A DNA stretch of 64,000 nucleotides, taken from the NCBI RefSeq assembly GCF_006345805.1, contig NC_043018.1, positions 16,430,001 to 16,494,000 on the forward strand. The letters run 5' to 3'. Positions within the stretch are counted from its first letter, which is position 1. Each line of letters begins with the position of its first letter. A program made the position numbers and the translations under genes. The stretch comes from Octopus sinensis. Lineage: Eukaryota. Under the pieces are notes generated by a model. It saw only the letters and a list, made by a program, of their open reading frames with translations. It was not told where the DNA came from and did no database searches. This document shows, one piece after another, positions 63,692-63,890 of this stretch.

Positions 63692-63890
63692 GTCCTCCTC
63701 CCCTTGCTCAAAGACAGTTTGCGTCCACAATATGCCAGTCAGGCTTTGCTGCCTAGATATGAAATGTCATTGTGTGTCTCTAGCGAGTTGCAGGTGTGTT
63801 CCTATAAATATCACTCGTGGCACTCATAACAGTATACTCCAAAGTGTAATCCCTATTCTCGTTTTCCTTGTAAATTTACTAAATTATTGA
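63692..63890 (+). CDS. Cystine-knot peptide gene 3, mature-peptide exon with hydrophobic C-terminal tail
   Basis: TGTATTTACAG acceptor; G+SSSPCSKTVCVHNMPVRLCCLDMKCHCVSLASCRCVPINITRGTHNSILQSVIPILVFLVNLLNY*; the spliced precursor is 107 aa. Confidence 0.85.

What the first reader, a model, noticed from the sequence alone, without database searches (positions are those of the whole stretch)
63692..63890. One paralogue appears membrane-tethered (GPI-signal-like tail) while its neighbours are soluble
Seen: after the last Cys, gene 3 continues VPINITRGTHNSILQSVIPILVFLVNLLNY*, with small residues (G/T/N/S), a short spacer, about 16 hydrophobic residues and a stop. It has an N-I-T sequon, and a second sequon (N-M-T) in the propeptide. 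Genes 1 and 2 end instead in basic tails. Established: GPI-anchored toxin-like folds (lynx1/Ly6, fly quiver/sleepless) act as endogenous ion-channel modulators, but those are three-finger folds. Inference: this could be a naturally tethered knottin lying beside secreted paralogues, a snapshot of an endogenous modulator-to-toxin transition or the reverse.
Basis: partly seen in the sequence, partly recalled or inferred. Interest (0 to 1): 0.88.

Follow-up and report, generated by a model that had tools for sequence, protein, structure and literature searches.

The report
Octopus knottin-like peptides with hydrophobic tails
The greasy C-terminal tail on this small cysteine-rich gene is real, but it is the normal ancestral ending of an octopus-only gene family, and the two "soluble" neighbours lost it through a 267-base deletion; whether the tail is a lipid (GPI) anchor signal is still untested.

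Summary
Gene 3 (exons 59579-59642, 60399-60459, 63692-63890; 107 aa) ends ...CRCVPINITRGTHNSILQSVIPILVFLVNLLNY*, and genes 1 and 2 end in Lys-rich tails.

The framing is inverted. The window is octopus DNA, not arthropod. The gene belongs to a family found only in the genus Octopus. It has a conserved signal peptide, a short pro-region usually ending KR, and a hypervariable 8-Cys knottin-like core. Nearly every member carries the same hydrophobic C-terminus: 19 of 22 last exons read in this genome, and 9 of 9 in O. bimaculoides, including all seven distinct RefSeq products retrieved.

Genes 1 and 2 are the derived exceptions. A ~267-bp deletion removed the tail codons, the stop and the first poly(A) signal. 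Their basic tails are translated A-rich former 3' flank. A third copy lost the tail through a nonsense codon.

The tail has the layout of a GPI signal: a signal peptide, Asn and small residues, and a short marginally hydrophobic end with no cytosolic tail. However, canonical omega sites are present in only 13 of 24 tails, and gene 3 has only N-I-T. The tail evolves at the 3'UTR rate with no codon periodicity, and selection for hydrophobicity is weak (P~0.04-0.1).

GPI anchoring is the best guess (~0.4) and is unproven.

The parts
59579..59642 (+). Gene 3 exon 1: start codon and signal peptide MKGISVLLFCVFISYTFSDKQ plus 1 base (phase-1 donor G|GTAAGT)
   Evidence: This exon is 93-97% identical with its flanks in seven other copies of this cluster and 80% in an eighth.
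60399..60459 (+). Gene 3 exon 2: pro-region DVASVRQQRGAYVGLSNMTK(R). It carries the N-M-T sequon and ends in the KR dibasic site completed by the first base of exon 3.
63692..63890 (+). Gene 3 exon 3 (terminal coding exon): mature domain, tail and TGA stop
63705..63797 (+). Eight-cysteine knottin-like core, C-x4-C-x8-CC-x4-C-x-C-x5-C-x-C. This is the hypervariable part of the family.
   Evidence: 8 invariant Cys in 26 sequences; raised pS and pN; AF2 model and knottin neighbours
63798..63833 (+). Linker VPINITRGTHNS. It holds the N-I-T sequon (63807-63815), which is the only relaxed-rule omega candidate, and the family-conserved Asn (63828-63830).
   Evidence: (first 8 codons vary at 2.17 changes/site)
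63834..63887 (+). Hydrophobic C-terminal tail ILQSVIPILVFLVNLLNY, predicted helical
63888..63890 (+). TGA stop. A stop (TGA or TAA) sits at the same aligned position in 15 of the 18 aligned tail-type last exons of this genome.
63891..64000 (+). Conserved 3'UTR block. It is as conserved as the tail and is not coding. AATAAA follows at 64021, just outside the window.
63830..63850 (+). Left edge, in gene-3 coordinates, of the ~267-bp segment (to ~64116) that is deleted in genes 1 and 2
49256..49319 (+). Gene 2 exon 1 (signal peptide)
50079..50139 (+). Gene 2 exon 2 (pro-region DVASLRQQTGDSLVLRIMNK(R))
52667..52847 (+). Gene 2 exon 3: 8-Cys core plus a Lys-rich tail. From ~52806-52821 onward the sequence is homologous to DNA that lies 227 nt downstream of the stop in tail-type copies.
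42182..42338 (+). Gene 1 last exon. It carries the same deletion as gene 2, plus a further 24-nt deletion. No exon 1 or 2 was detected upstream, and there is a 100-N gap at 40542-40641.

Best explanation
**Shown.** Gene 3 is an ordinary member of a tandemly amplified, Octopus-restricted family of three-exon genes. Exon 1 encodes the signal peptide. Exon 2 encodes a pro-region that ends in KR in most of the ten copies modelled (TNR, TKG and exon-3 KR variants occur). Exon 3 encodes a hypervariable 8-Cys knottin-like domain, a 30-residue tail and the 3'UTR. The hydrophobic tail is the ancestral ending of the family. Genes 1 and 2 lost it through one ~267-bp deletion, and another copy lost it through a nonsense codon.

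**Inferred.**
1. The precursor enters the ER through the signal peptide.
2. The C-terminal segment (I-L-Q-S/T, then about 9 hydrophobic residues, then N-L-x-x-Y) is too short and too weakly hydrophobic for a stable transmembrane helix, and it has no cytosolic extension.
3. It therefore most likely acts as a GPI-attachment signal. The tail would be cut off at an Asn or other small residue 18-26 residues from the end: N-x-S/T four residues after the last Cys in the gene-3 cluster, and N-[NAT]-G in the other clusters.
4. The knottin-like domain would be left lipid-anchored on the cell surface.
5. A KR-directed convertase would remove the pro-region.

On this reading the tail-less copies (gene 2, and the nonsense copy at C22:16.505 Mb) would be secreted derivatives.
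For: **Family-wide tail.** Searches show it in 19 of 22 last exons in this genome and 9 of 9 in O. bimaculoides. The most divergent member has an unalignable 3'UTR but still ends in a hydrophobic tail (..NNGMIQTVASILSSLAILY). Its orthologue in this genome keeps that tail.

**Deletion origin of the gene 1/2 tails.**
- Gene 2 positions 52806-53116 match gene-3 downstream DNA 64117-64419 at 89.7% identity.
- That block follows the stop at a short, similar distance in the other copies. The gap is 227-228 nt in the two copies where both ends were measured, gene 3 and the copy at 90.4 kb.

**GPI-like layout.**
- The signal peptide is conserved.
- The tail ends the protein.
- The best 15-mer sums on the Hessa scale run from about -0.8 to +3.6, i.e. 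marginal hydrophobicity.
- An Asn sits at tail position 10 or 11 in 23 of 24 tails.
- 13 of 24 tails have a site with omega in S/N/G/A/D/C and omega+2 in G/A/S at 18-26 residues from the end.
- AF2 models the tail as one helix detached from the core.

**Terminal exon.**
- AATAAA lies at +130/131 in 7 of 8 cluster copies.
- The RefSeq models read to this stop.

**Retention of hydrophobicity.** It is somewhat higher than in calibrated neutral simulations. Mean Kyte-Doolittle score of the 9-residue core is 3.47 against 2.89±0.40, and 4% of simulations do as well.

**Engineered precedent.** Engineered GPI-tethered knottin toxins are functional (PMC2577701, listed).
Against: - No GPI predictor could be run.
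- By the rule of thumb, 11 of 24 tails lack a canonical omega/omega+2 pair. Gene 3 has only N-I-T, with omega+2 = Thr, and that site is also a glycosylation sequon.
- The spacer between N-x-G and the hydrophobic run is only about 4 residues in many members.
- Several tails carry Arg or Lys in or beside the hydrophobic run (L019, L021, L023, L024, L034).
- The hydrophobic codons change at 0.85 per site against 0.95 in the 3'UTR, with no third-position excess.
- Tail pN/pS is 0.7-2 between paralogues and 0.71 pooled over two orthologue pairs, 12 nonsynonymous to 5 synonymous.
- The tail has been lost at least twice with the rest of the ORF intact.
- There is no expression or protein evidence.
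Confidence: 0.4

Rival explanations
1. The tail is a C-terminal propeptide. It would act as a transient membrane anchor or sorting signal and be cut off by an endopeptidase, for example a legumain-type Asn-specific enzyme at the conserved Asn, or cleavage at the R/H two to three residues upstream. The final product would be a soluble secreted knottin-like peptide, possibly a salivary or venom, immune or signalling peptide.
For: - An Asn is conserved at tail position 10/11 in 23 of 24 members, and N-[G/S]-[I/M]-[L/I] in about 18 of 24. This fits Asn-endopeptidase specificity more uniformly than the strict omega/omega+2 rule.
- The KR pro-site, the conserved signal and the hypervariable core resemble secreted toxin or defence peptide families.
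- Tail-less copies keep an intact ORF.
Against: - No animal precedent is known to me for a hydrophobic C-terminal propeptide on a knottin.
- Legumain acts in acidic compartments rather than the ER.
- A hydrophobic C-terminus that directly ends the protein behind a signal peptide is the classical GPI context.
- Nothing here shows cleavage.
Confidence: 0.23
2. The tail has no function of its own. It is a tolerated legacy sequence that is conserved only because the whole exon outside the core evolves slowly, through young duplicates, gene conversion or UTR-level constraint.
For: - The tail's substitution rate equals that of the 3'UTR, with no codon periodicity.
- pN/pS is about 0.7-1.6.
- The frame after the stop stays open about as well as the tail does.
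- In neutral simulations zero stops is unremarkable (32% of runs), and the charged-residue counts are also unremarkable.
- Loss by deletion and by nonsense codon, and an L-to-R change in L034, are tolerated.
Against: - Mean hydrophobicity of the 9-residue core is matched or exceeded in only 4% of neutral simulations, and the count of non-hydrophobic residues is that low in only 10%.
- The most divergent member has an unalignable UTR but keeps a hydrophobic end of the same length in two species.
- A 13-16-residue hydrophobic C-terminus on a secretory protein can hardly be inert for trafficking.
- The signal peptide, which is certainly functional, shows equally uninformative pN/pS in these short comparisons.
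Confidence: 0.2
3. The tail is kept in the mature protein as a hydrophobic helix. This would be either a minimal type-I membrane anchor or a membrane-partitioning appendage of a secreted peptide.
For: - AF2 predicts one continuous helix for residues 45-63.
- There are no charged residues in the last 18 positions of most members.
Against: - The strictly hydrophobic run is 6-10 residues.
- Q, S/T and N interrupt the segment, and gene 3 has Pro within it.
- The simple Hessa sums are around 0 or positive even for the best 15-mer.
- There is no positive-inside flank.
- The post-stop frame is not coding: it shows no periodicity, and it has frameshifts and a 34-nt deletion in one cluster.
Confidence: 0.12
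4. One reading: gene 3 alone has acquired a tether, while its neighbours represent the normal soluble state. This would be a snapshot of a modulator-to-toxin transition, or the reverse.
For: Within the 64-kb window alone, only gene 3 has the tail.
Against: - The tail is present in 19 of 22 last exons genome-wide and in the sister species.
- The gene 1/2 tails arise from a lineage-specific 267-bp deletion.
- Gene 1 lacks exons 1 and 2.
Confidence: 0.02

Closest known systems
Inhibitor cystine knot (knottin) peptides, e.g. the spider omega-agatoxin/Pfam Toxin_7 type, gurmarin, tachystatin
   Same: - Small secreted domain with Cys spacing C-x4-C-x8-CC-x4-C-x-C-x5/6-C-x-C, i.e. a CC doublet and two C-x-C motifs.
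- A two-stranded beta hairpin in the AF2 model.
- Most of the 30 listed Foldseek PDB neighbours (all those ranked 1-13, and about 24 overall) are knottin peptides, with target-normalised TM of those mostly 0.41-0.59.
   Different: - There is no significant sequence or fold match. Toxin_7 gives E 0.084 and 13.6 bits against a cut-off of 27, and only for gene 1. Foldseek E-values are all at least 1.4.
- Connectivity is untested.
- The host is a mollusc.
- No described knottin family known to me, or found, carries a hydrophobic C-terminal signal.
Ly6/uPAR GPI-anchored 'prototoxins' (lynx1, Drosophila quiver/sleepless)
   Same: If the tail is a GPI signal, the logic is the same: a small disulphide-rich toxin-like domain tethered by lipid to the cell that makes it.
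   Different: - They have a different fold (three-finger LU domain) and a different Cys pattern.
- There is no Pfam UPAR_LY6 hit.
- GPI anchoring here is only inferred.
Engineered membrane-tethered toxins (knottin toxin fused to a GPI signal; PMC2577701)
   Same: The same architecture as proposed here: signal peptide, knottin, linker, GPI signal.
   Different: Those are artificial constructs that use a borrowed vertebrate GPI signal. Here the arrangement would be natural and family-wide.
Conotoxin gene superfamilies (molluscan)
   Same: - A three-exon layout with signal, pro-region, then mature peptide plus 3'UTR. This is from my knowledge of the conotoxin gene literature.
- Near-invariant signal exon and hypervariable mature region.
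- Raised synonymous as well as nonsynonymous divergence in the mature part.
   Different: - There is no sequence similarity and no Pfam conotoxin hit.
- The host is a cephalopod.
- A conserved hydrophobic C-terminal tail is not a conotoxin feature.
- Venom expression is unknown.
Cyclotide and plant knottin precursors with a C-terminal tail processed by asparaginyl endopeptidase (from memory; a lead only)
   Same: A knottin domain followed by Asn-Gly/Ser-Ile/Leu and a short hydrophobic tail. Both the GPI transamidase and asparaginyl endopeptidases are clan CD, family C13 enzymes.
   Different: - That is a plant system in which cleavage is coupled to backbone cyclisation.
- Six family members here have N-A-G or N-T-G instead.
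- Nothing was tested.

Membership tests
Knottin / inhibitor cystine knot peptides | At least six Cys with knottin-compatible spacing, including a CC doublet | tested here: met
   There are eight invariant Cys in an alignment of 26 family members, with the pattern C-x4-C-x8-CC-x4-C-x-C-x5/6-C-x-C.
Knottin / inhibitor cystine knot peptides | Significant match to a curated knottin family profile or to a solved knottin sequence | tested here: not met
   Pfam gives only Toxin_7 at E 0.084 and 13.6 bits (cut-off 27), for gene 1. Genes 2 and 3 have no hits. The PDB sequence search gives none.
Knottin / inhibitor cystine knot peptides | Knottin fold in a structural comparison | tested here: inconclusive
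   The AF2 model has pLDDT 71 overall and 74-82 in the core. The Foldseek PDB list is dominated by knottins, but the best E-value is 1.4 and target-normalised TM for those hits is mostly 0.41-0.59.
Knottin / inhibitor cystine knot peptides | Disulphide connectivity I-IV, II-V, III-VI with a threaded knot | not testable with these tools
   This needs model coordinates, NMR or mass-spectrometric mapping.
GPI-anchored proteins | N-terminal ER signal peptide | tested here: met
   MKGISVLLFCVFISYTFS|DKQ has an n-region K, a 14-residue hydrophobic core and T-x-S at -3/-1. The exon is near-invariant in the ten copies aligned. This was judged by inspection; no SignalP was run.
GPI-anchored proteins | Hydrophobic segment at the extreme C-terminus with no cytosolic tail and only marginal hydrophobicity | tested here: met
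   Kyte-Doolittle mean of the last 15 residues is 1.2-2.3. Runs are 6-10 residues. The best 15-mer Hessa sums run from -0.8 to +3.6. The stop follows directly.
GPI-anchored proteins | Omega site (S/N/G/A/D/C) with a small omega+2 (G/A/S), followed by a polar spacer of about 5-10 residues | tested here: inconclusive
   By rule of thumb, 13 of 24 tails have a strict site (N-x-S, N-[NAT]-G). Gene 3 has only N-I-T, with spacer RGTHNS. Six tails have no site. The spacer after N-x-G is about 4 residues.
GPI-anchored proteins | Positive call by a trained predictor (NetGPI, PredGPI, big-PI) | not testable with these tools
GPI-anchored proteins | PI-PLC release, Triton X-114 partitioning, or an ethanolamine-phosphate-modified C-terminus | not testable with these tools
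   Experimental.
Ly6/uPAR (three-finger) prototoxins | LU domain with its 8-10 Cys pattern | tested here: not met
   There is no UPAR_LY6 or other Pfam hit, and the Cys spacing is different.
Conotoxin superfamilies | Superfamily-specific signal sequence or a Pfam conotoxin profile match | tested here: not met
   There is no Pfam hit. A profile search of 1.84 billion representative proteins found relatives only in Octopus.

The most novel reading that the evidence does not exclude
A whole octopus-specific family of knottin-like peptides (at least ~25 last exons in this genome) is natively GPI-anchored. These would be natural 'tethered toxins' displayed on the producing cell, with a hypervariable binding surface, and soluble forms would occasionally be generated from them by 3' deletions or nonsense mutations. 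This would be the first natural lipid-tethered knottin family, and a ready-made system for asking how tethered modulators and secreted peptides interconvert.
Probability: 0.3. Interest if true: 0.8.

Novelty: new variant of a known kind. Interest (0 to 1): 0.52.

Why it matters
**If the tail is a GPI signal.** Octopuses would have evolved, independently of Ly6/uPAR proteins, a large and rapidly diversifying set of lipid-tethered cystine-knot-like ligands. Neuroscientists build exactly this architecture artificially to silence channels cell-autonomously.

- The family would offer many natural variants.
- It also contains natural tail-less derivatives (gene 2, and the nonsense copy at C22:16.505 Mb) for comparing tethered with soluble function.

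**If the tail is not a GPI signal.** The family is still of interest.

- It is an uncharacterised, genus-restricted, tandemly expanding group of secretory peptides.
- Its core evolves about three times faster than the surrounding introns, even at synonymous sites. That makes it a clean case for studying focal hypervariability of the conotoxin type in a cephalopod.

**For annotation.** O. vulgaris gene models in these clusters are chimeric, and no product of gene 3 was found in the protein collection searched.

Tried and rejected
1. **Spider or arthropod origin.** I assumed this at first from the Cys pattern and the weak Toxin_7 hit. It was rejected when the only homologues proved to be Octopus proteins.
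2. **A +2 frameshift behind the gene 1/2 tails.** I first read the MAFFT alignment as a +2 frameshift in an A-rich run, with remnants of tail codons in their 3'UTR. This was rejected. BLAST and realignment show a ~267-bp deletion that joins the exon to DNA normally lying 227 nt past the stop.
3. **Stop-codon read-through or editing into the open post-stop frame (RSALLNLVDKCH..).** This would make a transmembrane segment plus a basic cytosolic tail. It was rejected because the frame has no codon periodicity, a frameshift in L024, an in-frame stop in L034, and a 34-nt deletion in the 14.4-Mb cluster.
4. **A conserved internal splice donor (GTATAC at the G/S codon).** One O. vulgaris model (P0007) uses it. 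That model is a chimera of several tandem genes, the GT is absent in L021, L023 and L024, and the O. bimaculoides RefSeq models do not use it.
5. **Searches that found nothing.**
   - The search for homologous proteins with the gene-2 last exon alone.
   - The PDB sequence search.
   - Six literature searches, including one with the peptide strings themselves.
   - A tRNA scan of the palindromic element.
6. **Blocked steps.** Further loci from the genome could not be cut out, so the copies on C10922 and at C22:13.686 Mb were not read.
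Full report
**1. What is at the coordinates**

On the + strand, the frame 63657-63890 reads ...CIYR SSSPCSKTVCVHNMPVRLCCLDMKCHCVSLASCRCVPINITRGTHNSILQSVIPILVFLVNLLNY*. A polypyrimidine tract and AG acceptor end at 63691, so the exon starts at 63692.

A pattern scan for the cysteine framework finds exactly three such exons in the window, at about 42.2, 52.7 and 63.7 kb. They lie in tandem units of about 10.5 kb that are 83-89% identical.

The upstream exons of gene 3 are clear:

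- Exon 1 is 59579-59642. It encodes MKGISVLLFCVFISYTFSDKQ plus one base, with donor G|GTAAGT.
- Exon 2 is 60399-60459. Its acceptor is TTTCAG|AT, it encodes DVASVRQQRGAYVGLSNMTK plus AG, and its donor is GTAAGA.

**2. The organism and the family**

The 107-aa precursor finds only four proteins among 5.8 billion. All four are RefSeq 'uncharacterized proteins' of Octopus bimaculoides, 47-56% identical.

A profile search of 1.84 billion cluster representatives adds only more O. bimaculoides models and three O. vulgaris models. It finds nothing outside the genus; the long bacterial hits are spurious.

One O. vulgaris model contains the core of locus L037 of this genome letter for letter. O. bimaculoides orthologous introns are about 92-93% identical to this genome. 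The window (G000:C22:16430001-16494000, genome 2.72 Gb in 13,516 contigs) is therefore from an Octopus of the vulgaris/sinensis lineage. The size and contig number fit O. sinensis from memory, but I did not verify this.

Pfam gives only a sub-threshold Toxin_7 hit for gene 1. PDB sequence search gives nothing. Six literature searches, including one with the peptide strings themselves, found no description of the family.

**3. The tail is family-wide, not special to gene 3**

Searching the whole genome with the gene-3 last exon gives more than 20 related last exons. They lie in three clusters on C22 (13.70-13.73, 14.44-14.47 and 16.47-16.58 Mb) and on unplaced contigs. Later searches added a copy at 21.46 Mb and further unread copies.

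I translated 22 of them. Nineteen end in the same way: 30 residues after the last Cys, then a stop at the same aligned position. Examples:

- L022: CWCRTQDKSRATHNSILQSVIAILVFLVNLPIY*
- L026: CYCNPKNMSRVTNAGILQTVMAFLIFLVNLPFY*
- L039: CKCNSQNMIHVANNGILQTVIIFLIFFVNLPSY*

In O. bimaculoides, all nine last exons seen have the tail. These are the seven distinct RefSeq products retrieved plus two further exons in locus L047.

The exceptions in this genome are:

- genes 1 and 2 of the window;
- L020 at C22:16.505 Mb, which has a TAA right after CWCT with the tail sequence still following.

Minor variants also occur. L036 and L037 have a 12-nt deletion and end four codons early. L030 and its O. bimaculoides orthologue P0002 share a 1-nt deletion that changes the last residues.

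The cluster that the window cuts into contains at least ten copies on both strands. Exons 1 and 2 and their splice sites are conserved.

**4. How genes 1 and 2 got their basic tails**

Gene 2 from 52806 onward is 89.7% identical to DNA that lies at 64117-64419 in gene-3 coordinates, 227 nt beyond the gene-3 stop. The same block follows the tail-type stop at a short, similar distance in every other copy of the cluster. I checked the gap in two copies, where it is 227-228 nt.

Genes 1 and 2 therefore share a deletion of about 267 bp (gene-3 coordinates ~63850-64116). It removed the hydrophobic codons, the stop and the first AATAAA. The frame then runs into A-rich former 3' flank, which is why the new tails are Lys-rich, until a TAA. 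Gene 1 has a further 24-nt deletion.

Gene 1 has no detectable exon 1 or 2. The region where they are expected is microsatellite plus a 100-N gap. It may be a truncated copy.

The polarity is unambiguous: tail first, tail-less derived.

**5. Is the core a knottin?**

Eight Cys are invariant in 26 aligned members. The spacing, with a CC doublet and two C-x-C motifs, is that of 8-Cys ICK peptides.

An AF2 model built on this alignment has pLDDT 71 overall and 74-82 in the core. It shows a beta hairpin (residues 23-29 and 32-37) and a separate helix for the tail (residues 45-63).

Foldseek against the PDB gives no significant hit; the best E-value is 1.4. Most of the 30 listed neighbours are knottins, including all those ranked 1-13: gurmarin, agelenin, psalmotoxin, mu- and omega-agatoxins, tachystatin and leginsulin. 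Target-normalised TM for these is mostly 0.41-0.59.

I therefore call the core 'knottin-like'. Membership is not established.

**6. Is the tail a GPI signal?**

For:

- The signal peptide is conserved.
- The tail ends the protein.
- It is only marginally hydrophobic, with runs of 6-10 residues and 15-mer Hessa sums around 0. That suits a GPI signal better than a transmembrane helix.
- Asn and small residues precede it.

Against:

- I applied a rule of thumb, recalled from the published mutagenesis and big-PI descriptions: omega in S/N/G/A/D/C, omega+2 in G/A/S, and 17-31 residues after omega. Only 13 of 24 tails have such a site.
- Gene 3 has only N-I-T (omega+2 = Thr), which is also its glycosylation sequon, followed by the spacer RGTHNS.
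- Six tails have no site.
- Where the site is N-[NAT]-G, the spacer is only about 4 residues.
- Several members carry Arg or Lys in or next to the run.

No trained predictor was available.

**7. Is the tail under selection?**

I counted changes on a tree of 18 tail-type exons:

| Segment | Changes per site |
|---|---|
| First 8 linker codons | 2.17 |
| 4 'omega-like' codons | 1.08 |
| 13 hydrophobic codons | 0.85 (positions 1/2/3: 1.00/0.77/0.77) |
| 63 nt of 3'UTR | 0.95 |

The hydrophobic codons show no codon periodicity and change at the same rate as the UTR.

- Pairwise Nei-Gojobori pN/pS for the tail is 0.75-2.
- Two orthologue pairs with O. bimaculoides give 12 nonsynonymous to 5 synonymous changes, pN/pS 0.71.
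- The signal and pro-region exons give equally uninformative ratios, so this test has little power here.

I also simulated neutral evolution on the tree, calibrated to the observed 82.7% identity:

- Mean hydrophobicity of the 9-residue core was matched or exceeded in 4% of runs.
- The low number of non-hydrophobic residues was reproduced in 10% of runs.
- Absence of stops was reproduced in 32% of runs.

The most divergent member (P0008 and its orthologue L049) has an unalignable 3'UTR but keeps a hydrophobic tail of similar length in both species.

In sum, there is weak evidence that hydrophobicity is retained and no evidence for residue-level constraint. The tail is dispensable for keeping an intact ORF.

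**8. Terminal exon**

AATAAA lies 130-131 nt past the stop in 7 of 8 copies of this cluster; in gene 3 it is at 64021. The O. bimaculoides RefSeq models end at the tail's stop.

One O. vulgaris model leaves the exon at a GT just before the hydrophobic run. That model is a chimera of several tandem genes, and the GT is not conserved.

There is no RNA evidence for this genome.

**9. Verdict**

Shown:

- the gene model;
- the family and its restriction to Octopus;
- the ancestral, family-wide tail;
- the deletion origin of the basic tails;
- the hypervariable core.

Inferred, with rough probabilities:

| Reading of the tail | Probability |
|---|---|
| GPI-type attachment signal | ~0.4 |
| Cleaved C-terminal propeptide giving a soluble product | ~0.23 |
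| No function of its own | ~0.2 |
| Retained hydrophobic helix or minimal anchor | ~0.12 |

The data do show natural conversions from tail-bearing to tail-less forms within one cluster.

Noticed in passing
window 63705-63797 and the equivalent cores in L019-L049 and L046-L047: The Cys-rich core diverges about three times faster than its flanks, at synonymous as well as nonsynonymous sites. Between orthologues, core pS is 0.23 and pN 0.22, against ~0.07-0.08 divergence in introns and UTR. Between gene 3 and L019, core pS is 0.25 against 0.05-0.07 in the signal/pro-region and tail. This suggests focal hypermutation, or mosaic gene conversion that spares the core, rather than positive selection alone.
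   Followed up: partly
window 62999-63416 (intron 2 of gene 3); related copies at 41560-41916, 52299-52393, 8632-8824, 27800-28073 and 33028-33410: A ~420-bp palindromic (self-inverted, 73% arm identity) repeated element, MITE/SINE-like, inserted in the intron just upstream of the last exon. ARAGORN finds no tRNA in it.
   Followed up: partly
window 30000-42180, including the 100-N gap at 40542-40641: Gene 1 has no exon 1 or 2. The place where they should be is filled with CA/TA/GT microsatellites and an assembly gap, so gene 1 may be a 5'-truncated copy at the edge of the cluster or an assembly casualty.
   Followed up: partly
G000:C22:16505482-16505670 (L020); extended coordinates 71055-75670: This paralogue has intact exons 1-2 and core, but a TAA directly after CWCT. 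The tail sequence persists in frame behind the stop. It is a second, independent tail loss.
   Followed up: partly
G000:C22:~16539420-16539605 (L023) and 16564366-16564470 (L033): L023 is a complete last exon without its own exons 1-2, lying about 7.6 kb beyond the L024 last exon, on the side away from that gene's exons 1-2. L033 is a duplicated fragment of only the tail part, lying just upstream of the L019 last exon. These could be partial duplications or possible alternative terminal exons.
   Followed up: no
P0007 and P0011 (O. vulgaris CAI9738754.1 and CAI9738802.1): The deposited O. vulgaris gene models in these clusters are chimeras. They string together exon 2 and core pieces of several tandem genes, and P0011 ends in the wrong reading frame of a last exon. 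No product of gene 3 itself turned up in the protein collection.
   Followed up: partly
L019 (G000:C22:16564071-16564271) with its exon 2: In this close relative of gene 3 the split codon at the exon 2/3 junction is GGG. The KR processing site therefore reads K-G, so pro-region cleavage may differ.
   Followed up: no
window 63891-64000 and the equivalent in other copies: The frame stays open after the stop (RSALLNLVDKCHRSDCFYRRRK...) in most copies, and the ~65 nt after the stop are as conserved as the tail. The region shows no coding periodicity, so this looks like a conserved 3'UTR element of unknown role.
   Followed up: partly
window 6900-7630, 9675-10350, 25570-26190, 30090-31480, 35840-36800, 38730-40170: Very long microsatellite and low-complexity tracts (CT/TC, TA, CA and GTT-type) occupy a large part of the window and create long spurious ORFs.
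   Followed up: no
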